Below, one piece after another: positions 5,986-62,082 of a stretch of 63,316 nucleotides of DNA. The stretch comes from Octopus bimaculoides (taxonomy: Eukaryota). The position numbers were made by a program, and so were the translations under genes. A model generated the notes under the pieces. The model searched no databases. It saw only the letters and a program-made list of their open reading frames with translations, and was not told where the DNA came from. How positions within the stretch are numbered: position 1 is the first letter of the stretch; every line of letters begins with the position of its first letter. Where the stretch lies: the NCBI RefSeq assembly GCF_001194135.2, contig NC_068995.1, positions 51,160,159-51,223,474 of the forward strand. Reading direction: 5' to 3'.

Positions 5986-6661
5986 TATGGTCATGTGTTA
6001 TGTCTGGATGAGGACAGCTGAGTGAGGAAGTGCTATACCCTAACAGTGGAAGGAACCTGTGGAAGAGGTAAACCCAGGAAGACATGGGATGAGGTGGTGA
6101 AGTATGACCTTTGAACGTTGGGCCTCACAGGGGCAATGACAAGAGACCAAGACCTTTGGAGATATGCTCTGATTGAGAAGACCCAGCAAGTAAAGTGAGA
6201 TCGCAGCCATGGCTGATGCCAGTGTTGCATGTCCAGCCTAAAAGTACCCTTGATGCATCGGGCGATATGATATGCTTGAGAAAACCTGTTGAGTCAAGTA
6301 AAACCAAAATTGTAGCTGTGGCCAGTGCTCCCTGACTGGCTCCCTTGCCAGTGGCATGTAAAAAGCACCATCTGAACATGGTCGATGTCAGTGTTGCCTG
6401 ACTGGCTCCCATGCCAGTGGCATGTAAAAAGCACTATCCGAATGTCACCGATGCCAGGGCCGCCTGACTGGCTCCTGTGCCAGTGGCATGTAAAAAGCAT
6501 GCACTAAACTCTTGGAGTGGTTGGCATTAGAAAGGGCATCCAGCTGTAGAAACATTGCCAGATCAGATTGGAACCTGGTGCAGCCAGTGGCTTTCCAGAC
6601 CTCAGTCAAACCATCCAACCCATGCCAGCATGGAAAACGGATGTTAAATGATGATGATGAA
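5986..6661 (+). mobile_element. 5'-truncated RTE-clade LINE: ORF C-terminus, 3' UTR and (ATG)n tail
   Basis: 5986-6198 reads YGHVLCLDEDS*VRKCYTLTVEGTCGRGKPRKTWDEVVKYDL*TLGLTGAMTRDQDLWRY. The UTR has three 66-bp repeats (6321, 6387, 6453) and ends ...GTTAAATGATGATGATGA. Confidence 0.85.
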
Positions 6662-8026
6662 AGACATGATTAACAGAAAGGTAAGTTTTTAAAATCATTT
6701 TGAAAACATGGCGAGGTGACAAAGCACATTTATGTGAAACCAGTTGACTCAATCATACAGAATATTTTATAAGATTATCAGAGAATGTGAATTTTTGTTT
6801 TCTTTTTAGAAAATAATAATTAAAAAATGAGTTTACTGAACTTTCTGATTTCAAAATGAAACTATCAGAGTGCAAAATAAAATCTTGGTGAAACTGAGAT
6901 GAAAAACAAAGTCTCTAACTAAAAAATGGCTATCACAGGAGTTATTCTGAAGACTGTTGTTTGGTAGAAAGAAATATAGTAAACTTGTTATTTACATATT
7001 AGAGGCATGGATTGTCATGAAATCATGTGCTGAAACAGATGTTGTGTCTTGGGAAGGTCATTTTGCAAATAAAGCCACATGCACTGGCTCTATTCCATTG
7101 TTTACTTTAATTCAGCTAAAATCAGATAAACTAATTAACCAATGAACTGACTGCTTGATTAAAAAATTTGGCAATGAAAGGATTCTGACAAACAAACTGA
7201 CTGATTGAGCAACTGGTTAATCAATTTGTTAACTGGTTAAATAGTTGACTAATAATGGGAAAAAGTGCATGTGCTTTATTGGCTAGGTGATTGTCCCACA
7301 ATTGTAATACAATCCTGTTGAAAATGATTAAATAATATTTTGTTTTCTGATAAGACAGTTATAATGTGTTTGCTTAATGAAATCTGTTCTGAGTAGAGAT
7401 AACTATGGCTTCTCCACATCGTAAGTAAAATCACAACTATATCATAAAAGTAATATCAACAGACTTAAGTCACAAAGAGAAGACCAAAGAGATCAACAAA
7501 ATATCTTCTGTCCTTTTTTTTCTCTCCATCTTTCAACAGTAGCTGGCTCACAAATGTTAAATAGACAAATTTCCAGACTGACAGGCACAAACCTGGAAGC
7601 ACACATGTATAATAGATTTATAATATATAAATATGCAGAATGTGCAGAAGGATTAAATATGAATAGAGAATGAGAAAGACAATTGATTTTCTTGTTCCCA
7701 GATACTCAAACACAAAATATAATCAGATTCATTGCCATAAGCAAAAACATTTAGAATAGGCAATAAAATCAAACAAGAAAACAATTTTGAATGGATTTCA
7801 GATACATATATATAATATAAATATGTCTGAAGAAATTATGTGAAATGGCAATGCTATATCTTGAAGACCTGCAATGCAGCTATATTCAGAATATCCCTTT
7901 TCAACAATATTTTTGCATCATGATATCCCATTGAAAGTCATGCACTAGCACCGCTTTTAGTGTCTTGACCTTGGTCAATGATAGCCAAAACAAGAACATG
8001 TATCAATGAAATCAAATATGAAAAAT

Positions 8027-20305: not shown

Positions 20306-21241
20306 GACATAGAAACATATAAATGAAACTTAATTTCAGTTTGGGTATGCCAAATGCATAGTTTGAAAAAAAAAAGCAACAAAAAATAAATAAATAAAAC
20401 ACTGAATGCAATATGTAATACTGAGAAATGGAGCAGAAAGAATGTATATATGATTAAAAATCAGAACTGAAGTAAAAAGAAAAGAATGAAAGAAGAAAAG
20501 AAAAAAAAAAAGGAAAACTAGCAAACATTTTATAGACCATATGTTGCAGTTTTGAATACACAAGATAATGAACAAGAGTGGGAGATGAAATGTTGCAGAT
20601 TGTAAGCTGTAGAATTGTGGAAGTGATGTTGGGAAAATAGAAGTTGCTATCAAAATACAGAGAGGTAGCATTGTACAATGTATATGGAAAAGCATTATGT
20701 AAATAATGAAACCAATTAGTGCACAACAGATGCAGAGGCATCTCAACAAACACACATTGTATAAGCAGTACAAGTATTGGACTGCAACAATGGATCATTG
20801 GAGTGTAGATGACAGCTAGAAAAATAGACTGAATGCAAGGAGAGAATGCAATTTTATCTTTATTAACTCCGAAAGGATGTGTTGTTGTTAAAAATCTTAT
20901 AAATTATAATGAAGACCTATCGCTGTAAGACTTGTCTGCGATGATTTCAATAAAATTCGCTGAAAATAATTACATGACGAAATGTCTGATTACTGCAGTC
21001 GAGGAAACTGTATTGATACTGACATGTCATATAAATGAATGAGAACTAAACGAATGAATATTGCAAGTTCGGGTTAAACTGGAATAGAGGCGGATAAGAC
21101 AAAGTTAGATCGAAAGCTGACCTAAAAGATAAAAGGAAGGGAGATAACTAAGGATAAAGGATGAAGAGCAATGTACATAGCCATAAGCTGTTAGACAAAA
21201 GCAGGAAAACAATTGAGAACTAGTCAAAAATACTACATATA

Positions 21242-21272
<31 letters not shown>

Positions 21273-21282
21273 NNNNNNNNNN

Positions 21283-21325
<43 letters not shown>

Positions 21326-22871
21326 TATTGGGAATGAAGCAGTAGTGAATTTGTGATATTGTTCTCACGTAAAGAGCACACTATTGACATTCTTCAAAAA
21401 CTTAGCAACGTTGAGAAAATGTACGCTTGAAAATGAAATAAAAGACGGGTGTGGGTAGCAAATTTATCTATGATGAAGATTGATCAACGCCAACGGGTGG
21501 AAATTGGAAATTTTGAAACGGAAATCTGTCAAATTCTGTACCAAATGCTATAACAGTTTATTAAGGAAGCGGCGCAATCAATATCATTTTAAAATTCAAA
21601 AATTCAAAATGAAGCCGTAGATATGTGGCAAATTGATTAATATTTTTTAACAGCAGTTTATCCAATTACTACAACTATTTTTCTTTGGAAATCAATTCTA
21701 AGATTCAGAAAGAAAATATCGCAATGGAATTGCTCTGATCACATTCAGATGTCTTGTTTTAAAATAGTGAAGCCCACTGAGCAAATTGAAACAGCTGCAA
21801 ACCAAACAAAATTAAACGAATGAGCTTCGAATAATTCCAGATACATTAAAAGCAACACCGAGAGAGAGTCTCTACATGATACTTCGACTTGCTAGAAATA
21901 ACAGCCAAATCTCTTTCAATTAAGACTTGTTTTAGCCACACCCCTAAAAAGGCGGGATGGTGACGACTGGAATGCTTTTTGATCACGTATCTGCTGGAAC
22001 AAGGTTGACCCATGTCTAAACACATGGACACACAAATTAGTTAATTAGTCCATTCATAATAGATCCTCGGCTGAGATTGATTTTGATGAATGTTTCAGGG
22101 ATGCAAATATATTTGCGATATCTAGAGGATTGAATACAAGTGTAGGGTGAAAAAAAAAGAACAACCCCTATTGAAGTATGTCAGCAAAGATCATTGAAGA
22201 GAACATGCAAAATATTGGACAAATCTAACATTTTACTCGCCTTACAAAATAATATTACACGTAACGGCCCACCCCATTAGTTTCACACACACACACACAT
22301 ATGTACTTCGTATTTTGGTATTGGCAACGAGAAAACAATCCAAGCATAGATCAACGACAATGTGTGTCATATAATCGATAGAAGAATTATTAAAAAATAC
22401 TGACACAAGTTAGGCTAATAAAACAAACTTGCATTAAGAGTTAAATAATTAATTAAGCATTAGCGTTAATTAGAGGTCATGCATCCGGGACAAATAACAG
22501 ATAATGATGTATCGACATAAAAAAAAAAAAATCTGTGACAAATTAATTATAATTATCACCCGCTTAAAGTTTAACTGACAACTTTTCTCGTATGTAAACT
22601 TTCAGTTGCACACAAAACTGGTCCTCACATACATACACATATATAAACTTACTCCAATGAAAGCGAGTTGAAACTTCAGAAAATTTCAGCTCAAATCATT
22701 TGTGCTTATTACCGAGATAAAATTGTAGCTTTTCAAATAAGGTTGTACCTCAAATGACCATTCATTTAATTATACCGCATATTAAAACGATCAATTTAAT
22801 AAGACTGCACCATAAAATCATTTTAATTAGTGTGTATCTATACTAATAACAAATCAGTGTCAAAAGTTCAG

Positions 22872-22907
<36 letters not shown>

Positions 22908-24518
22908 ACATTACTTAGAAGTAACATTTCAGAAAACACACCCAAATTGCAATGACAACTGAAGCAATTTATGTAAGATTTTGGGAAAGGCTGAGAGAAA
23001 ATATTTCAAATTCAGATGCTGTTAGTTAATTTGCTACACTGTTTAATAATATTTCAAATTATTCTCCAGAATAAATATCTCGTAGTAATTCATCTTTATA
23101 TCCGAGATTTTAAACAGCTAAAACTACGTTGGTTGGCACGCTTCACACAATATCCGAGTTACAAACTATTTTAGAAATCTACCATCGTTACTTATTATTA
23201 AATGAGATAAAGTGATAATGTTTTTTTTAAAATTCTGACTCAGACGGAAAAGATCTATATATATATATATATATATATATAACAGCTTATTTTTCAGATT
23301 TATTGTTTGCTTCAGATATTTAAATCGAGAAAGGATTCTATTATTAAATCTAGTACAACTGAATACAGCCTCGCAATGAACCTTTCAGAAATATGAACAT
23401 AAATTTAGGTACAAGGCTTAATTTTTACTTCTACCTAATTTGTCTGACATTTGTCGTAGGCGGAATGGACATAAACACATACTGTGACAATTCATTCTAT
23501 ATACAAAAGAAATGTTTTTATCTTATCTCAAGCGTATGCTTTTGTTGATAAGAATTCGAAACTAAAGCAATACCTACTTTGGAGAATTGGGGTTAATAAC
23601 AATAGTAATAGTTTCAAATTTTGGCACAAGGTCTGTAATTTTAAGGGAGGGGTTAAGTCGATTACACTGACCCCCAGTGTTCAACGTTTCTGTACTTCTT
23701 TTATAATAAAAAAATCCTAACAAATATCACATAACCATTTAACATTTCTTTGTATATTGTTATGCTTGTGGAAGTTTGCCCTCTGTAGATATGTTTATAT
23801 GTATCAATAAAAAAGTGAAAAAGGAATGTCAATGAAATTGGTATGGAGTTTCCAGTATCATTCATTATTTAACAAACAGCTGAGAAAGGAATGGTACACA
23901 CATCCGACACTTAAAAGAGGATAAAGAAAAACCCGGCACTAAATTAAATAATCTTATATCACATGGAATCTATGGGAGAGAGAGAGAGAGAGGCGATATG
24001 GTGGTAGCTTAGCATATTTTTAGTGTTAATAACCTAGAAACTAATTTCTTTTGCTCTAACAATTTCAATGTAGCATTTCACACGGAAATAATATTAATTT
24101 TTTTTCTTCTTTAGACGATTTTCAAAATTTTCTTATTACTTTTTGCCAAACAGCAAGAGGGACGTATTTGTAATCTGAAATAGCAATATGACACTTCGTT
24201 TCTAGATAAAAACCCCGCAGAATCACGAGGGGGAAAAAAAGAGATAAGAGTTTCTTAATAGACACAGTTATCCAGAGTGGTGTGTTTGGTTTGAAAAGGC
24301 ATTGGAGACGAGGGTTCGAATCGAAGGAATTGTTTGATCTGTTGTCGTCGTCAAGTGGGTGTGAAAGTTGATTTGCACTGAGTCAGCCAAGTCTGTTGTT
24401 AGTGTTGGCACCCACCAACTAATATCAGTTTGCCATATGGTTTCAACACCGCTGTTTATATGCCAAATGTCGCTCCCTAAATGACTACATACTCAAGAAG
24501 TTCCCTAAACTGTCAGAA

Positions 24519-24550
24519 TGTGTGTGTGTGTGTGTGAGCGCGCGCGCGCG
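24519..24550. repeat. (TG)9-AG-(CG)6 alternating purine-pyrimidine tract
   Basis: Read directly from the sequence. Confidence 0.9.
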
Positions 24551-24904
24551 ACGGATATGATGTAGATAACAAGAACAAAAATAAAAACTGTTTCGATAAA
24601 AAAAGAAAAAAAAAAACGATATGAAAATAAAATTCAATTTCCTTTTTTTTTTTTTTAAGTATATATACAATATCAAACAACATAAAAAATTTGCATTAAG
24701 AAAATAAAAATCCTAACATGTTCTGTGTTACTTATATAACAAATATTTATCAACAAAATCAATCTAATGCTAATTTACGCTTTGTCAAAAAAAAAAAAAA
24801 TGTTAGAGAAGCAGCATTTTATTTGTAGGTGTGTGTGTAATAAACTAACAAATTATTACACTTAGTTAATTAACCCTCTCCCATCTTGTTACACACATAC
24901 AATA

Positions 24905-24943
<39 letters not shown>

Positions 24944-25494
24944 GTTGGTTTCGTGACGTTTAAGTCGTTATACACACACACACGTATATATATATGTGTG
25001 TGTGTATATAATCCAGGGGTTAATATATTTAATGCCGAAACTACTGGCCTGCAATTCAGAGAAGGAAGTAGGTAGTATACTGTTTGCGAATAGACATATG
25101 TGATAAGATGGACAATAAATGTAAAGGGTCAAAACCGTAGCAATGGAATTAACATTAAAACAAATTATTATTTGAGAGCGATGCAGGTGGAGAAGACAGT
25201 TAAAAAAATGAAAAGAAATAGCGTTTAGAGGTGCTAATTAGTTCGTTGCTGCATAGTTTGAGTTCGATTCCCGCCGGGATGAGAGAATCTTTTTTTAATT
25301 TTTATTCCTTTCTGACTACATCGATGAAATAAATAGGGGTTAGATATTGAAGCGGGGGTTGATTTAATCGATTGTAATTCTTAGAAAAAAGAACAAAATG
25401 TAAAGAAAAGAAAAGAAATGTAGTCTTGTAAGGTTTAATAATACAAAGAAATCATTTTTCAACAGCAAACAGGAAAACATCATCTTTGACTTAC

Positions 25495-26141
25495 CTGGGG
25501 AAAGCATCAAAAAACCAAGTTCGTTTTGTATCCGGAAAAGCCAAACGTACACCAGAGGTAAGAGGCGAATGTAGGATAACAGCTCCAACTTCAAATCTCG
25601 AAGCGAGATCCACGGTAGGAACCGTTCCTATACTTTGTCCGTACAAAATGACATTTTGTGGACTGATGCCATAACGAGTCCGCAGGGCTTGCAAAGCCGC
25701 ATCAATATCCGAATAAAGATTTTTCTCCGAAGGTTTTCCTGAGCTAGCTCCATAGCCGGAATAATCGTAACTAAAGATATTACAGTTGATTCTAGATCCG
25801 AGTCCGATATAAAAACTACTCATTTGTCCTAAATCGACTGCATTTCCGTGGCTGAAAAGCAGAGTGAAACGAGCGTTGGGTGAACAGCGAACAAACATAC
25901 ATGAGATTCGGTTTCCCCGTGTAGTTCTCGTCATGAATACTTCGATACAATCCAGTTCCTTTTGCGAATACTGCCACTCTGCTCTTTCTGTGAGATGCAA
26001 ACTGTACCGTGAGCCTGTTTGGTCCGATACGAGAGAATATGTCGGTTCTGGAGGCAGAAACGCCAGTTTGGCAGCGATACGGGAGGGACATGGCGGACAG
26101 CAAAAAAGACAACAAAGCTCGCTGAGAGAGAGGCCGTTCAT
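25495..26141 (-). CDS. ABHD17: ABHD17-family protein depalmitoylase (alpha/beta hydrolase), first coding exon (647 nt, ends phase 2)
   Basis: [20 protein letters not shown]-terminal Cys cluster, [21 protein letters not shown] nucleophile (Ser170). Ends ...GAT GCT TTC CCC AG|GTAAGT, a consensus donor at 25494-25489. Confidence 0.97.
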
Positions 26142-26326
26142 ACCTTAGGTTTGGGGGCCTAAGCAAATGGTGAAAAAAAAAAAAACAAACCAGGCTGTTG
26201 AGTACAGACTAAGCAGGCACACAGCCACTTTTAAGACGACAACGTAATGCAGAACATTCAATTTACAAAGTATAACCTAGACATGAGACGTATTCAACTG
26301 GAAGCAAGTAAGACGACTATTCAATA

Positions 26327-26334
26327 TGACGTCA
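26327..26334. promoter_or_regulatory. Perfect CRE palindrome TGACGTCA
   Basis: Exact match to the CREB/ATF consensus; binding not shown. Confidence 0.6.
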
Positions 26335-26567
26335 CATGCCATCGACGGGAAAACGAGTTCGACTGCGGATGTACCAAAATCCACATCCGGTATTTTCTAA
26401 TAGTCGAAAAGACAAAAAAAAAAACCAGGTTTTTTTTTCGAAATAAATAATTTGTGAAATATTACGAAAGGAAGATAAAATGAAAATATCGAAGCTAATT
26501 CGTGACGTTAAATTAAAAATAATCTTTAAAAAAAAAAAAAAAAAAATCTTTCCGGGCTGCTTGTGCA

Positions 26568-26582
26568 TCACGTCACTTCCGT
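26568..26582 (-). promoter_or_regulatory. Overlapping ETS-CRE composite (ACGGAAGTGACGTGA on minus strand)
   Basis: Plus strand reads TCACGTCACTTCCGT; CGGAAGTGACGT core about 80 bp upstream of the C9orf85 ATG. Confidence 0.6.
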
Positions 26583-26663
26583 AATGTAGTGTCCATTTCG
26601 GGGAAGCACATGGTAAAGCTTGGCTCCAGATTCTTTTTACAAAAATAACAACAACAATCTAAG

Positions 26664-26872
26664 ATGAGTTCACAGAAAGGTAATCTGAAGAAATCTGGCC
26701 CACCCCGTCACAGAAATAACACAGCTTTTAGAAATAATTTACACGATAACAGTATCAAACAGAAAATGATAAATTCTTTGGAAATTACTGGATTGTGTGA
26801 TCCGTGTACTAAAGTGATTGAATGGAAAATAAAATATAAAAAGTACAAACCTCTCACAAATCCTAAAACTTG
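26664..26872 (+). CDS. C9orf85: C9orf85 / DUF2039-family protein, first coding exon (209 nt, ends phase 2)
   Basis: MSSQKGN...CDPCTKVIEWKIKYKKYKPL matches the recalled C9orf85 signature (MSSQKGN...CxxCxxxxEWxxKYxKYKPL). Ends ACT TG|GTAAGC. Confidence 0.93.
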
Positions 26873-28530
26873 GTAAGCAAAAATTCTCGTAACTTTACGT
26901 CTTTTATTCTTCGTATTTAAATATGTGAATTTGCATCTATTTCTCCTCTCTTTCATTAAATTCAATCAAATTTCTAAAAATATTTCACTGCTTTTGAAAT
27001 TGTTGAAAATTGCAGCAATAGTCGACTTCGACTTTCATTTCCAAAAAAGCACCAGTAAGAATACTGTAATATGTTCAAATGATCGTATATTATTATCCCT
27101 GAGTAAGACATTTTAGTTTACGTACCTTTTCGACTAAATATAGCTCTTCCGACAGAGACATAGCTACTAGGAATTTAAACTGAGAAATGACAGGCGTACA
27201 CTAAACATTCCATATTCTTTATAAAGCATCGGATCGATGAATTAACTACCACTTAAGCACGGGGTTGTTGTAACCGACTATCTCACTTCCCTATTTTATA
27301 TATATATAAGCATAAGGCTAGGGTTTATGCCTATAATAGAAAAAAGTTATTACCCTAATAAGTTACACAAACAATTGGAAAGAGCATACATTAACGATAG
27401 TTTCGCAGCCAAAATCTAAATACGAATATGAACTAGAAATCTGCATAATTTTGGATTATTGTTTCTGATTATTCTGATGTAGTCTTTGTTATCTCTCTTG
27501 TCACCTTCTTGGGTTAACAAACCGTTTACGAGCCAACGTGATCGATCTATTAGAAATAACGGTAAATTTATAGTTTCACACCAGACTCGATTTCGGCACT
27601 AAATCGTTTTTTTCCCCCCGCATGTGTTTTCTTCGTGGTTTATCATGTAATGTTGATAACCCAATGTTTGTATATCTTTCTAAGCCGCCCAAGAATCACT
27701 AGATAACTGAGCCAGGTATGATGTATTTTTGAATTAGTGGAAACAATGTCGCTTTATCACGCTTCTGACCAGTCAGAGGAACAACAACAACAAAACGACG
27801 TTTGGTGTGAAACTATAAATTTACCGAAATAACAGCCAAACCTCCATATCCGACTGTCTTAAAAATGAACACATTGTGTCTAAATATGACAAGACTGACT
27901 CTTCGATAATGAGCCAACAGGTGATCTTCTGATTTGCTAGAAATAGTCACACTCTCTTCACAAACTGCTCCCCAACGCATTACTTAAGGAAAGATACATG
28001 GAATAATGGGCGCCCATATAATTATAAAAGACTGGGTGATCACGGATAGAATGCCTTTTGTCATAGGGCTGCTCGATTAGGCTTCATTTGGGGTTAAATA
28101 ACAGCCCTTTAATAAATGCTTTCAAGTCTAGAAGGAGGCGACATTCTGACAATATATATAACATGTACCTCCAAATGATTGCTCTATCTTTTATAGAAAT
28201 AGCAGTCAACTCTTCCTCAAATCACAAACCACTGTTTCAAACAAGATAGGATACGTTGGATAGTGGAGGCTATGGGTGTGTGTGCATTAAGTCTTAACAA
28301 AAAGGAAGACAGGTTTGTCATGGTTGGAATACTTTTCATGGATCAGCTCGACCAAAGGCAACCCAGGAGCTAAAATAAATATTAACAGCGCCACAATACA
28401 GAGAAGTAAACATCCGGTGACAACTACACGTGTAATATTACATATTATCTGCATTCGTTTTATGAACATAGCATATTATTTATTATTACTTAGGTTGAAA
28501 GTGATTGTTTGGTAGAATTTAAGTCCTTCT

Positions 28531-34936: not shown

Positions 34937-35511
34937 TTAAAACAGTAGTATGATTTTGTGAGTAGTTTGGCTACTGTTTCTAGCCGGTTGAGTAGCTGCT
35001 TAGAGACTTTTGTGTTAGTTCTATTTATACATGGTTTGATAGTCTCTCTATGTTTGTAGAGTGGTGACTATTTCTTTTGAATAGTGATCCAAAATAGGTT
35101 TCTCGTAATATCCAGACTGCTTTGATGTCGATGGACATTGTTGAATGGTAAGATTTTTATGTAATGTGATGTTATTAAATTAGAAAAGATTTTAGCTATT
35201 GAGAGACAAAAAACAAAAACACATCTCATTATGTGAGATGTACAAATAACTGTCCTTAAATAAAATCTCATAAATATTTAAAATATTCGTTACTAAGTTA
35301 TTTATCAGTTATAAACTTGTTCATTGTGAACATTTTTATGGTCTGTGATCATGTTCTTGCTTCAGTTGTTGCTATTTACTTAACAGAATGGACTTATTTC
35401 TCCAACAATAAGTTATGACCTAGTTAAGATATCTTAATAGTCAAGTATATCTTATCTATCACCTCCATTTACATACCATGTAAAACTTTTTTGTTATATA
35501 TTTAGTAATAT

Positions 35512-35760
35512 ATCATCATTGTTATTTAACATCCGTTTTCTTTGTTGGCATGGGTTAGCTACTTTGACAGAAGCTGGCAAGCCAGAGAACTGCACCAGGC
35601 TTCAGTGTCTGTCTGTTTTGGCATGGGCCCTGTGGCTGGATGCCCCTCTTAATGCCAACCACTTTACTGAATGTACTAAGTGCTTTTTATATGGCATCAG
35701 CACCAGTGGGGTTGCCAAGTAACTTGTAAGACAAAGACCCCTCAGTTGGGAGAGGGAGGT
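35512..35760 (-). mobile_element. RTE-related 3' UTR copy (variant subfamily)
   Basis: CATCATTGTTATTTAACATCCG...GGCATGGGTT...GGATGCCCCTCTTAATGCCAACCAC. Confidence 0.75.
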
Positions 35761-42599: not shown

Positions 42600-43500
42600 G
42601 GCAATAAACTATGCTTAAGAAGACCTGTTGAGTCAAATGAAATCATTGTTGAATGACCGTTGAATAAACTATGCTTGAGAAGACCTGTTGAGTCAAATGA
42701 AATCATTGTTGAATGACCGTNNNNNNNNNNNNNNNNNNNNNNNNNNNNNNNNNNNNNNNNNNNNNNNNNNNNNNNNNNNNNNNNNNNNNNNNNNNNNNNN
42801 NNNNNNNNNNNNNNNNNNNNNNNNNNNNNNNNNNNNNNNNNNNNNNNNNNNNNNNNNNNNNNNNNNNNNNNNNNNNNNNNNNNNNNNNNNNNNNNNNNNN
42901 NNNNNNNNNNNNNNNNNNNNNNNNNNNNNNNNNNNNNNNNNNNNNNNNNNNNNNNNNNNNNNNNNNNNNNNNNNNNNNNNNNNNNNNNNNNNNNNNNNNN
43001 NNNNNNNNNNNNNNNNNNNNNNNNNNNNNNNNNNNNNNNNNNNNNNNNNNNNNNNNNNNNNNNNNNNNNNNNNNNNNNNNNNNNNNNNNNNNNNNNNNNN
43101 NNNNNNNNNNNNNNNNNNNNNNNNNNNNNNNNNNNNNNNNNNNNNNNNNNNNNNNNNNNNNNNNNNNNNNNNNNNNNNNNNNNNNNNNNNNNNNNNNNNN
43201 NNNNNNNNNNNNNNNNNNNNNNNNNNNNNNNNNNNNNNNNNNNNNNNNNNNNNNNNNNNNNNNNNNNNNNNNNNNNNNNNNNNNNNNNNNNNNNNNNNNN
43301 NNNNNNNNNNNNNNNNNNNNNNNNNNNNNNNNNNNNNNNNNNNNNNNNNNNNNNNNNNNNNNNNNNNNNNNNNNNNNNNNNNNNNNNNNNNNNNNNNNNC
43401 TTGAGAAGACCTGTTGAGTCAAATGAAATCATTGTTGAATGACCGTTGAATAAACTATGCTTGAGAAGACCTGTTGAGTCAAGTGAAGTCATTGTTGTGG
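42600..43500. repeat. 60-bp minisatellite spanning an assembly gap
   Basis: TGAATAAACTATGCTTGAGAAGACCTGTTGAGTCAAATGAAATCATTGTTGAATGACCGT; two copies left of the gap and about 1.7 right of it. Confidence 0.9.
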
Positions 43501-50891: not shown

Positions 50892-51017
50892 TTCTGGCTG
50901 TTCTAAAAAGGCTATCAAAAGAGCTTACCATTTGCTGTGTCAGCAATGTGCTGAAAACAGACAAATATGTCCAAAATGTGCTAAAAACCATGTTGCGACG
51001 GAGACAAACGATGAAGC
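50892..51017 (+). CDS. C9orf85: C9orf85 second coding exon (126 nt, phase 2-2); not shown in the ORF track
   Basis: Polypyrimidine tract plus CTAAT then CCCAG|T. TG+T gives Cys, then SGCSKKAIKRAYHLLCQQCAENRQICPKCAKNHVATETNDE, completing four CxxC pairs. Ends GAA GC|GTAAGT, or reads through to TAA at 51019-51021. Confidence 0.92.
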
Positions 51018-54660: not shown

Positions 54661-55297
54661 NNNNNNNNNNNNNNNNNNNNNNNNNNNNNNNNNNNNNNNN
54701 NNNNNNNNNNNNNNNNNNNNNNNNNNNNNNNNNNNNNNNNNNNNNNNNNNNNNNNNNNNNNNNNNNNNNNNNNNNNNNNNNNNNNNNNNNNNNNNNNNNN
54801 NNNNNNNNNNNNNNNNNNNNNNNNNNNNNNNNNNNNNNNNNNNNNNNNNNNNNNNNNNNNNNNNNNNNNNNNNNNNNNNNNNNNNNNNNNNNNNNNNNNN
54901 NNNNNNNNNNNNNNNNNNNNNNNNNNNNNNNNNNNNNNNNNNNNNNNNNNNNNNNNNNNNNNNNNNNNNNNNNNNNNNNNNNNNNNNNNNNNNNNNNNNN
55001 NNNNNNNNNNNNNNNNNNNNNNNNNNNNNNNNNNNNNNNNNNNNNNNNNNNNNNNNNNNNNNNNNNNNNNNNNNNNNNNNNNNNNNNNNNNNNNNNNNNN
55101 NNNNNNNNNNNNNNNNNNNNNNNNNNNNNNNNNNNNNNNNNNNNNNNNNNNNNNNNNNNNNNNNNNNNNNNNNNNNNNNNNNNNNNNNNNNAATCAGACT
55201 CTCCGTACTCGAAAATGGGGGATTCTGTAAAAAAAAAAAACGAAAGTGGGGGTGGTCCACATTCTTTATGTCTGCCGCCTGTGGCAATATCGGATAG

Positions 55298-60649: not shown

Positions 60650-62082
60650 TTTTCTTTTTATGTCTGTACTTGCCTAATGCTTTACTCTAAAGCATATTTG
60701 CGTTCTGTGCGTGTGTGTGTGTGTGTGTGTGCGTGCGTGTGTGTGTGTGTGCGTGTGTGTGTGTGTGTCGTGATAATTAGGGCTCGACAGATATCATGAC
60801 AACCCAATAAAGCAAGTTCTATAGGCATGGTGGGCACATGAGAATTAAGGTCCTACAGATGTTGTGGTCGTCAGACAAGGGTTCCACAGATGTAAGGAAT
60901 CCTAAAAGAATAGGTTTATTAAGTAGAGATGTTTAATGAACCTGACAGGGCCATCTGGACCCTGCCTGTATAGACAAGGTGCACTTGAACAAGTTGTTAT
61001 ACTGATGCTGCTGTCCATGACGACGACAACGATGGTGATGATGGTGGTGGTGGTGGTGGTGATGATGATGATGACCTTGTTGCTGTTGTTTTGTTGGTAT
61101 GGGGGGTAGTATTTGTGGTGGGGNNNNNNNNNNNNNNNNNNNNNNNNNNNNNNNNNNNNNNNNNNNNNNNNNNNNNNNNNNNNNNNNNNNNNNNNNNNNN
61201 NNNNNNNNNNNNNNNNNNNNNNNNNNNNNNNNNNNNNNNNNNNNNNNNNNNNNNNNNNNNNNNNNNNNNNNNNNNNNNNNNNNNNNNNNNNNNNNNNNNN
61301 NNNNNNNNNNNNNNNNNNNNNNNNNNNNNNNNNNNNNNNNNNNNNNNNNNNNNNNNNNNNNNNNNNNNNNNNNNNNNNNNNNNNNNNNNNNNNNNNNNNN
61401 NNNNNNNNNNNNNNNNNNNNNNNNNNNNNNNNNNNNNNNNNNNNNNNNNNNNNNNNNNNNNNNNNNNNNNNNNNNNNNNNNNNNNNNNNNNNNNNNNNNN
61501 NNNNNNNNNNNNNNNNNNNNNNNNNNNNNNNNNNNNNNNNNNNNNNNNNNNNNNNNNNNNNNNNNNNNNNNNNNNNNNNNNNNNNNNNNNNNNNNNNNNN
61601 NNNNNNNNNNNNNNNNNNNNNNNNNNNNNNNNNNNNNNNNNNNNNNNNNNNNNNNNNNNNNNNNNNNNNNNNNNNNNNNNNNNNNNNNNNNNNNNNNNNN
61701 NNNNNNNNNNNNNNNNNNNNNNNNNNNNNNNNNNNNNNNNNNNNNNNNNNNNNNNNNNNNNNNNNNNNNNNNNNNNNNNNNNNNNNNNNNNNNNNNNNNN
61801 NNNNNNNNNNNNNNNNNNNNNNNNNNNNNNNNNNNNNNNNNNNNNNNNNNNNNNNNNNNNNNNNNNNNNNNNNNNNNNNNNNNNNNNNNNNNNNNNNNNN
61901 NNNNNNNNNNNNNNNNNNNNNNNNNNNNNNNNNNNNNNNNNNNNNNNNNNNNNNNNNNNNNNNNNNNNNNNNNNNNNNNNNNNNNNNNNNNNNNNNNNNN
62001 NNNNNNNNNNNNNNNNNNNNNNNNNNNNNNNNNNNNNNNNNNNNNNNNNNNNNNNNNNNNNNNNNNNNNNNNNNNNNNNNNN

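What the first reader, a model, noticed from the sequence alone, without database searches (positions are those of the whole stretch)
26300..26620. Vertebrate-like bidirectional promoter grammar: ETS-CRE composite, full CRE and inverted ETS pair
Seen: TGACGTCA (26327-26334); GCGGATGT (26366-26373) and ACATCCGG (26383-26390) as an inverted pair; half-CRE TGACGT (26503-26508); CGGAAGTGACGT on the minus strand (within 26568-26582). Established: the overlapping CGGAAGTGACG ETS-CRE motif is bound by GABPA and CREB1 in mammalian proximal promoters, and GABP/ETS sites are enriched in bidirectional promoters. Inference: the same logic may drive this invertebrate pair and may be why the linkage is kept.
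Basis: partly seen in the sequence, partly recalled or inferred. Interest (0 to 1): 0.7.

Follow-up and report, generated by a model that had tools for sequence, protein, structure and literature searches.

The report
Octopod ABHD17–C9orf85 divergent promoter motifs
The flagged stretch is the 522-base spacer between two head-to-head octopod genes (ABHD17 and C9orf85); its CRE and ETS motifs are real and non-random, but the best-conserved one, a palindromic CRE, is an ancient ABHD17 element kept in animals whether or not C9orf85 lies next door.

Summary
All five motifs are present; only GCGGATGT is off by one base (26365-26372). They lie in the 522 bp between the start codons of ABHD17 (minus) and C9orf85/DUF2039 (plus), inside the window's only CpG-undepleted domain. 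They far exceed a local dinucleotide-preserving null.

Comparison splits them into three classes.
1. The full CRE TGACGTCA sits 142-210 nt upstream of the ABHD17 ATG in 14 of 47 independent lineages. These include abalone, Aplysia, zebra mussel, starfish, Nematostella and coral-type contigs. Half of them have a CCGGAA ETS core within 30 nt. Most lack C9orf85 nearby, so this is an ancestral ABHD17 element.
2. The mammalian-type 11-mer CGGAAGTGACG, 93 nt upstream of the C9orf85 ATG, was found again only in a second octopod. It is absent from four other head-to-head lineages.
3. GCGGATGT and the half-CRE at 26503 are lost even in the second octopod.

Best reading: two adjacent, separable core promoters that both use CRE/ETS-type sites. 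It is not one shared unit that explains the linkage. This is an ordinary kind of promoter with one unusually old site. Transcription starts, factor binding and the vertebrate orthologous promoter could not be tested.

The parts
25494..26141 (-). ABHD17 (FAM108-type depalmitoylase) coding exon 1: 216 aa, ATG at 26141-26139
   Evidence: Translation. Alpha/beta-hydrolase Pfam hits. 90% identical to Haliotis ABHD17B-like and 79-86% to other named animal ABHD17B. Exon 2 lies at 547-341.
26142..26365 (-). Constrained block: presumed ABHD17 5'UTR plus core promoter, including the full CRE
   Evidence: 96.4% identity to the second octopod L001, against 71-80% in flanking introns and 75.7% in the next 195 nt.
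26327..26334 (.). Palindromic full CRE TGACGTCA, 193-186 nt upstream of the ABHD17 ATG
   Evidence: Found at -142 to -210 in 14 of 47 independent ABHD17 upstream groups, from cnidarians to molluscs and an echinoderm.
26365..26372 (+).
   Evidence: Replaced by GCATAGCT in L001.
26383..26390 (-). CCGGATGT ETS site in ABHD17 sense, 48 nt upstream of the CRE
   Evidence: Conserved in L001 within a 32-nt block with 29 matches. Haliotis has ACATCCG/ACTTCCGG sites in a comparable position. By itself, a perfect 8-mer is kept in 24% of intron windows.
26503..26508 (+). Half-CRE TGACGT; probably not functional
   Evidence: TTACGT in L001, and it lies in the stretch that evolves at the neutral rate.
26528..26546 (.). 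19-nt poly(dA:dT) tract between the two motif clusters
   Evidence: L001 keeps a homopolymer here, but as a T run. A nucleosome-excluding role is inferred only.
26570..26581 (-). Overlapping ETS<->CRE composite CGGAAGTGACGT, about 93 nt upstream of the C9orf85 ATG
   Evidence: Kept in L001, where it is CGGAAGTGACGTCA with a full CRE. It sits inside the conserved block 26549-26602. It is the only instance of the 11-mer in 575 kb of fetched loci apart from L001.
26664..26873 (+). C9orf85/DUF2039 coding exon 1: 70 aa, splice donor GT at 26874
   Evidence: Translation. PF10217 at E=7.6e-16. Three differences from Argonauta hians C9orf85 over the first 69 residues. Exon 2 lies near 50896-50985.
21001..28000 (.). 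The only CpG-undepleted domain of the window, centred on the spacer
   Evidence: CpG observed/expected is 0.75-1.14 here and 1.74 at 26201-26600, against 0.08-0.66 in all other 1-kb bins.

Best explanation
The finding is the compact divergent promoter of an octopod ABHD17 / C9orf85 gene pair. It is best read as two adjacent, separable core promoters about 240 bp apart, joined by AT-rich, neutrally evolving DNA with poly(dA:dT) tracts.

ABHD17 side (26142-26365). This side is under strong constraint. It is anchored by a palindromic CRE that is an ancestral metazoan feature of ABHD17 promoters, lying at or just upstream of the transcription start. In most lineages an ETS core sits within 30 nt of it. 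In octopods the nearest ETS site is CCGGATGT, 48 nt away.

C9orf85 side. This side uses a lineage-specific overlapping ETS<->CRE 11-mer of the type bound cooperatively by GABPalpha and CREB1 in mammals.

Inferred mechanism. bZIP (CREB/ATF-type) and ETS (GABP-type) factors keep the CpG-rich spacer unmethylated and open, and they drive constitutive transcription in both directions.

Shown here: gene arrangement, motif presence, excess over chance, and conservation patterns. Inferred: which factors bind, where transcription starts, and any sharing of elements between the two genes.
For: - Head-to-head genes with 522 bp between their ATGs.
- The window's only CpG-undepleted domain is centred here.
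- Motif excess over a local shuffle null.
- Identity to the second octopod is 96.4% for 26142-26365, 75.7% for 26366-26560 and 86.4% for 26561-26663. Introns are 71-80%.
- TGACGTCA lies at -142 to -210 from the ABHD17 ATG in 23 loci forming 14 of 47 independent groups. Only 4 other copies occur in up to 1 kb upstream of all the loci.
- It is present in Aplysia, Dreissena, Acanthaster and Nematostella, where no C9orf85 exon lies in 6-8 kb of flank.
- A CG-containing ETS core lies within 30 nt of that CRE in 7 of 14 groups, against 0.09 hits expected per neighbourhood.
- Spliced, transcript-like contigs carry 143-171 nt 5'UTRs. Two of them begin inside the CRE, at GTCAC and CGTCAC. This places the start at or near the CRE.
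- The composite is retained in L001 and lies 93 nt from the C9orf85 ATG.
- A direct repeat ATGACGTCAC / ATCACGTCAC lies 241 bp apart.
Against: - No transcript, CAGE, ATAC or binding data exist for this species, so both transcription starts are inferred.
- A T13 tract followed by CTTAG lies about 20 nt upstream of the ABHD17 ATG and resembles a 3' splice site. A short 5'UTR intron is therefore not excluded.
- Retention of the composite in L001 is only modest evidence. 12.5% of perfect 12-mers and 3.5% of 50-column blocks with at least 46 matches are equally conserved in introns.
- The base 5' of the composite is A (ACGGAAGT), not the C/G conserved in mammals (PMC3464117).
- 33 of 47 ABHD17 upstream groups lack the CRE in the proximal 1 kb. 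Some of these may have distant first exons.
- Some transcript-like contigs (L052, L053, L061) contain the CRE inside the 5'UTR.
Confidence: 0.68

Rival explanations
1. First reader's reading. This is one shared bidirectional promoter whose GABP/CREB grammar drives both genes jointly, and that sharing is the constraint that keeps ABHD17 and C9orf85 linked from invertebrates to vertebrates.
For: - The head-to-head arrangement recurs in the second octopod, four Haliotis assemblies and two unrelated metagenomic lineages, L019 and L020.
- A chicken study lists both genes under the same 6-kb region (PMC10954189).
- GABP binds more than 80% of human divergent promoters, and adding a site induces opposite-strand activity (PMC2077898).
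- CRE and ETS sites are palindromic or orientation-tolerant.
Against: - The CRE persists with ABHD17 where C9orf85 is not within 6-8 kb: Aplysia, Dreissena, Acanthaster and Nematostella.
- C9orf85 loci L002-L006 have no ABHD17 upstream.
- The composite is absent from all non-octopod linked loci.
- The central 195 nt evolves at the intron rate.
- In Haliotis the ATGs are 1.4-4 kb apart, and a splice-acceptor-like sequence sits directly upstream of the C9orf85 ATG.
Confidence: 0.2
2. The motifs are real binding sites, but for other family members. The bZIP could be XBP1s, ATF6 or CREB3 (UPRE-like TGACGTGA at the composite in this species), or ATF1/ATF2. The ETS factor could be something other than GABP.
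For: - The composite's bZIP half reads TCACGTCA on the plus strand. That is one mismatch from the XBP1s consensus CCACGTCA.
- XBP1s sites are enriched at bidirectional promoters, with adjoining GABP motifs (PMC6959563).
- The 5' flank is A rather than C/G, and two of the three ETS sites have a GGAT core.
Against: The second octopod has a perfect TGACGTCA at the composite. The deeply conserved site is always the perfect CRE palindrome. Sequence alone cannot tell family members apart.
Confidence: 0.3
3. Chance. In an AT-rich spacer that happens to be CpG-rich, short CpG-containing motifs turn up and a motif-aware reader notices them.
For: - The motifs were picked after reading the sequence.
- Two of the five (GCGGATGT and TGACGT at 26503) are not conserved even in a sister octopod.
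- CGGATGT is generally over-represented in the window.
Against: The local dinucleotide-preserving shuffles already allow for CpG richness and still give P of 0.007 or less for each class. The CRE recurs at the same distance from the ATG in 14 independent lineages.
Confidence: 0.04
4. The conserved TGACGTCA acts at the RNA level as a 5'UTR element of ABHD17 mRNA, not as a DNA binding site.
For: Its distance from the ATG is constrained (-142 to -210). Three transcript-like contigs include it in their 5'UTR.
Against: Only the 8-bp palindrome is conserved, while its flanks differ completely between phyla. Most transcript-like contigs end just short of it or within it. Half the lineages have an ETS DNA motif on either strand next to it.
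Confidence: 0.05

Closest known systems
Mammalian ETS<->CRE composite motif (C/G)CGGAAGTGACGTCAC, bound cooperatively by GABPalpha and CREB1 (Chatterjee et al. 2012, PMC3464117; He et al. 2015, PMC4555227)
   Same: - Identical 11-mer core CGGAAGTGACG with exact overlap of the GT.
- Proximal-promoter position in CpG-rich DNA, next to a broadly conserved, probably housekeeping gene.
[quoted passage not shown] In mammals this is likewise the unconserved part.
   Different: - The 5' flanking base is A, not C/G.
- The host is a cephalopod.
- Conservation is shown only between two octopods.
- Binding and cooperativity are untested.
Human-type bidirectional (divergent) promoters enriched for GABP sites (Collins et al. 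2007, PMC2077898)
   Same: Head-to-head genes with less than 1 kb between them, CpG-rich, no TATAAA in the spacer, and ETS sites present.
   Different: The strongest conserved element is a CRE tied to one gene, not a shared GABP site. The strict GABP consensus CCGGAAGT is absent from the octopod spacer. The middle of the spacer is unconstrained.
Canonical palindromic CRE in CREB/ATF target promoters
   Same: Perfect TGACGTCA close to the inferred transcription start, conserved in orthologous promoters.
   Different: The conservation is unusually deep for one promoter site. It spans cnidarian and bilaterian lineages at a near-constant distance from the start codon. The paper library returned no description of it for ABHD17.
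XBP1s/GABP adjoining motifs at mammalian bidirectional promoters (PMC6959563)
   Same: An ACGT-core bZIP site next to an ETS site in a divergent promoter. The octopod composite's bZIP half is one mismatch from CCACGTCA.
   Different: The sister octopod has a perfect CRE instead. There is no evidence of a link to the unfolded-protein response or to 12-h rhythms.

Membership tests
Bidirectional (divergent) promoter | Two protein-coding genes head-to-head on opposite strands | tested here: met
   ABHD17 exon 1 on the minus strand with ATG at 26141. C9orf85/DUF2039 exon 1 on the plus strand with ATG at 26664.
Bidirectional (divergent) promoter | Transcription start sites less than 1 kb apart | tested here: inconclusive
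   The start codons are 522 bp apart, which bounds the distance only if neither gene has an upstream non-coding exon elsewhere. No transcript data for this species. Related transcript-like contigs suggest an ABHD17 5'UTR of 143-171 nt.
Bidirectional (divergent) promoter | Shared regulatory elements or co-regulation of the two genes | not testable with these tools
   Needs expression data or reporter assays. Comparative data suggest separable halves.
ETS<->CRE composite (GABPalpha/CREB1) | Core 11-mer CGGAAGTGACG with precise overlap | tested here: met
   26571-26581 on the minus strand, zero mismatches, unique in the window.
ETS<->CRE composite (GABPalpha/CREB1) | C or G immediately 5' of CGGAAGT | tested here: not met
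   The base is A (ACGGAAGT) in both the window and L001. The C/G requirement comes from PMC3464117.
ETS<->CRE composite (GABPalpha/CREB1) | Location in a proximal promoter or CpG-rich regulatory region | tested here: met
   About 93 nt upstream of the C9orf85 ATG. Local CpG observed/expected is 1.74.
ETS<->CRE composite (GABPalpha/CREB1) | Cooperative binding by GABPalpha and CREB1 | not testable with these tools
   Requires EMSA, protein-binding microarray or ChIP with cephalopod proteins.
Functional CRE of a CREB/ATF target promoter | Full palindrome TGACGTCA near the transcription start | tested here: met
   Sequence at 26327-26334. Nearness to the start is inferred from related transcript-like contigs that begin at or just after the CRE.
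Functional CRE of a CREB/ATF target promoter | Conservation in orthologous promoters | tested here: met
   14 of 47 independent ABHD17 upstream groups carry it at -142 to -210.
Conserved ABHD17-C9orf85 microsynteny | Head-to-head linkage in other animals | tested here: inconclusive
   Present in L001, Haliotis x4, L019 and L020. Not found within 6-10 kb in Aplysia, Dreissena, Acanthaster, Nematostella or a marsupial. Vertebrate linkage is supported only indirectly, by the chicken table.

The most novel reading that the evidence does not exclude
The ABHD17 core promoter is built on a start-site-proximal palindromic CRE, usually with an adjacent CCGGAA ETS site. This module has been held at a near-fixed distance from the start codon since before cnidarians and bilaterians split. 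That would make this depalmitoylase an ancestral CREB/ATF-plus-ETS target. In octopods the neighbouring C9orf85 promoter has independently acquired, or copied, the same logic in the exact overlapping ETS<->CRE form used in mammals. That would imply that DNA-mediated GABP-CREB cooperativity is usable outside vertebrates.
Probability: 0.3. Interest if true: 0.5.

Novelty: new member of a known kind. Interest (0 to 1): 0.35.

Why it matters
Single transcription-factor sites in promoters rarely stay recognisable across phyla. A CRE held 140-210 nt upstream of the ABHD17 start codon from cnidarians to molluscs and an echinoderm is therefore a clean, testable case of very old promoter constraint. 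It suggests that ABHD17, which according to the literature removes palmitate from PSD-95 and N-Ras, is under CREB/ATF control throughout animals.

For the original claim, the result is a useful correction. Shared motif types in a divergent promoter do not show that the motifs maintain the gene linkage. Here the best-conserved motif survives without the linkage. The octopod copy of the mammalian ETS<->CRE 11-mer gives a concrete site for testing whether GABP-CREB cooperativity exists in invertebrates.

Tried and rejected
- Human C9orf85 isoform X2 (P0176) lookup for the vertebrate spacer: not on record.
- Marsupial ABHD17B locus L013, with 10 kb of flank: no CpG island and no C9orf85 exon. The promoter must lie further upstream, so the locus is uninformative.
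- L016, the closest non-octopod C9orf85 (78%): an intronless copy with no ABHD17, no CRE and no ETS upstream. It is probably a retrocopy or has a different gene structure, so it is not usable for footprinting.
- L002-L006, C9orf85 loci of unknown taxa: no ABHD17 upstream and no consistent motif.
- Rfam and tRNA scans of the window: nothing. No hidden RNA gene explains the conservation.
- Paper search for run and assembly accessions to name the taxa: nothing. The taxon came instead from a cluster member named Argonauta hians.
- Supplements of the two ETS<->CRE papers searched for C9orf85, FAM108B1 and ABHD17B: no occurrence.
- The 'inverted ETS pair' as an ETS1-type palindrome: rejected. The cores are 14 nt apart, not the roughly 4 nt I recall for ETS1 homodimer sites, and one arm is not conserved.
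- Conservation in L001 as strong proof for the short motifs: tempered after an empirical intron null showed that perfect 8-mers and 12-mers are kept 24% and 12.5% of the time.

Full report
**Observation.**
- TGACGTCA at 26327-26334.
- ACATCCGG at 26383-26390.
- TGACGT at 26503-26508.
- ACGTCACTTCCG at 26570-26581, which reads CGGAAGTGACGT on the minus strand.
- GCGGATGT at 26365-26372, one base left of the stated position.

**Context.** The stretch is the spacer between two head-to-head genes.
- On the minus strand, a 216-aa exon starts at 26141 ([19 protein letters not shown]...). It is an ABHD17/FAM108-type alpha/beta hydrolase, 90% identical to Haliotis ABHD17B-like.
- On the plus strand, a 70-aa exon starts at 26664 and ends at a GT donor. 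It is C9orf85/DUF2039 (PF10217, E=7.6e-16).
- The start codons are 522 bp apart.
- Both genes have first introns of about 24-25 kb and together fill most of the window. ABHD17 exon 2 is at 547-341 and C9orf85 exon 2 is near 50896-50985.
- The C9orf85 exon differs at only 3 of 69 residues from the Argonauta hians protein. The closest contig, L001, clusters with that protein too. The window is therefore from an octopod, and L001 is a second octopod.
- CpG observed/expected is 0.08-0.66 in every 1-kb bin except 21-28 kb. There it is 0.75-1.14, and it peaks at 1.74 over 26201-26600. This is the signature expected of a constitutively unmethylated promoter in an otherwise methylated region.

**Chance.**
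- In the whole window, the 11-mer CGGAAGTGACG is expected 0.07 times and TGACGTCA 0.32 times. Each occurs once, here.
- Four of the window's eleven TGACGT copies fall within 250 bp.
- All the motifs contain CpG and the spacer is CpG-rich, so I shuffled the spacer itself while preserving dinucleotides. The results were TGACGTCA P=0.007, at least four TGACGT 0/5000, the 11-mer P=0.0002, and at least three CGGA[AT]GT 0/5000.
- The motifs were chosen after reading the sequence, which weakens these numbers somewhat.

**Second octopod (L001).** The same head-to-head arrangement is present, with a 550-bp spacer. Identity between the two species varies by segment:

| Segment | Identity |
|---|---|
| Introns | 71-80% |
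| Coding exons | 96-98% |
| 26142-26365 (ABHD17 ATG to 30 nt past the full CRE) | 96.4% |
| 26366-26560 | 75.7% (no constraint) |
| 26561-26663 | 86.4% |

- The full CRE is kept.
- The composite is kept and becomes CGGAAGTGACGTCA, with a full CRE.
- ACATCCGG is kept.
- GCGGATGT and the half-CRE at 26503 are lost.
- An empirical intron null tempers this. Perfect 8-mers survive in 24% of intron windows, perfect 12-mers in 12.5%, and a 50-column block with at least 46 matches in 3.5%. L001 alone therefore gives only modest support for the ETS arm and the composite.

**Deep comparison.** I fetched ABHD17 loci from named genomes and 80 ABHD17-bearing metagenomic contigs.
- TGACGTCA lies 142-210 nt upstream of the ABHD17 ATG in the window, L001, four Haliotis assemblies, Aplysia, Dreissena, Acanthaster and Nematostella. 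It is also there in coral-type, bivalve-type and other unidentified contigs.
- In total this is 23 loci, forming 14 of 47 independent upstream groups. Only four other TGACGTCA copies occur anywhere in up to 1 kb upstream of all the loci.
- The flanks are unalignable between phyla; only the palindrome is shared.
- In 7 of the 14 groups a CG-containing ETS core lies within 30 nt of the CRE, against 0.09 hits expected per neighbourhood. Examples are Acanthaster CCGGAAGgTGACGTCA, Aplysia CTTCCGGcaTGACGTCA, Nematostella CTTCCGGtaaTGACGTCA, and TGACGTCACCGGAA in Dreissena and the bivalve-type contigs L024 and L028.
- The octopods are among the exceptions. Their nearest ETS site is CCGGATGT, 48 nt away.
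- Spliced, transcript-like contigs have 5'UTRs of 143-171 nt, and two start inside the CRE, at GTCAC and CGTCAC. The CRE therefore sits at or just upstream of the ABHD17 transcription start.

**Linkage.**
- C9orf85 exon 1 lies head-to-head with ABHD17 in L001, in Haliotis, and in two unidentified lineages, L019 (539 bp between ATGs) and L020 (711 bp).
- In Haliotis the ATGs are 1.4-4 kb apart, and a splice-acceptor-like sequence sits just before the C9orf85 ATG.
- It is not within 6-10 kb in Aplysia, Dreissena, Acanthaster, Nematostella or a marsupial.
- Five C9orf85 loci of unknown taxa have no ABHD17 upstream.
- A chicken study lists both genes under one 6-kb region. From memory, the human genes are also head-to-head, but I could not fetch a vertebrate spacer.
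- The 11-mer composite occurs nowhere in 575 kb of fetched DNA except the two octopods.
- L019 has a bare ACGTCA at -87 from its C9orf85 ATG. In the window the ACGTCA half-CRE of the composite lies at -94.

**Mechanism.** The evidence favours two adjacent core promoters.
- The ABHD17 half is ancient and constrained, anchored by a CRE with ETS help.
- The C9orf85 half is younger and uses an overlapping ETS<->CRE.
- The roughly 195 nt between them evolves freely. It is AT-rich with homopolymer tracts, and one tract is kept as a homopolymer but on the other strand in L001.
- Binding by CREB/ATF and GABP-type factors is inferred from motif identity. XBP1/ATF6-type bZIPs remain possible for the TGACGTGA variant.

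**Comparison with known systems.**
- The octopod composite matches the mammalian 11-mer core. It also shows variation in the second CRE half, which is the unconserved part in mammals too.
- It fails the C/G flank rule.
- The strict GABP consensus CCGGAAGT is absent from the octopod spacer.

**Verdict.** The claim that shared GABP/CREB logic explains the linkage is not supported, because the CRE persists without the linkage. This is a new member of a known kind of element. The useful by-product is a very old, positionally fixed CRE at ABHD17.

Noticed in passing
window 21001-28000 against the rest: The window is strongly CpG-depleted (observed/expected 0.08-0.66 per kb), except for a roughly 7-kb domain centred on the divergent promoter (0.75-1.14). 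This looks like a broad unmethylated island flanked by methylated gene bodies.
   Followed up: partly
window 6617-6670 (+) and 35505-35560 (-): Two copies of a dispersed repeat share ...AACCCATGCCA(G/A)CA..GAAAACGGATGTTAAAT.A..ATGATGA. This contributes to the window-wide excess of CGGATGT (9 against 2 expected).
   Followed up: partly
window 26528-26546; L001 about 1590-1605: The 19-nt A run between the two motif clusters is replaced in the second octopod by a T run of about 13 nt. The homopolymer is kept but its strand is flipped.
   Followed up: no
window 26142-26200 (minus-strand sense): Just upstream of the ABHD17 ATG, the sense strand reads T13-CACCATTTGCTTAG|GCCCCCAAACCTAAGGT-ATG. This resembles a 3' splice site, so a short 5'UTR intron cannot be excluded.
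   Followed up: no
L012 7859, L024 1876, L028 2840: Dreissena (L012) and the two bivalve-type metagenomic contigs L024 and L028 share a different overlapping arrangement, TGACGTCACCGGAA(A/G), with the CRE first and the ETS second. A conserved TGTCATCGAT lies about 20 nt downstream.
   Followed up: partly
L016 6001-6378: A C9orf85 copy 78% identical to the window's runs through the exon 1/2 boundary without an intron. It has no promoter-like motifs or ABHD17 upstream. It is possibly a retrogene in an unidentified animal.
   Followed up: partly
L020 570-680; L011 12370-12390: Composite-like GGAAGTGACGTCA units that lack the 5' CG occur twice in L020, about 80 bp apart (GATGACGTCACTT...). One more occurs in Aplysia ABHD17 intron 1.
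   Followed up: no
L007-L010, about 22 nt upstream of the C9orf85 ATG: All four Haliotis assemblies have TTTTCAG|AC just before the C9orf85 ATG. This suggests a non-coding first exon near the ABHD17 promoter and a 1-4 kb 5'UTR intron.
   Followed up: no
window: 11 N runs, e.g. 42721-43399, 54661-55191, 61124-62082: The assembly has 3016 N bases in 11 gaps, many flanked by microsatellite-like (TA/CA) and homopolymer-codon repeats. ORFs reported across them are artefacts.
   Followed up: no
window 26326-26335 and 26567-26576: A direct repeat ATGACGTCAC / ATCACGTCAC lies 241 bp apart and is identical 10-mers in L001. A second short repeat, CGTAATGCAG / CGTAATGTAG, is also present. These hint that the C9orf85-side element may derive from the ABHD17-side CRE.
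   Followed up: no
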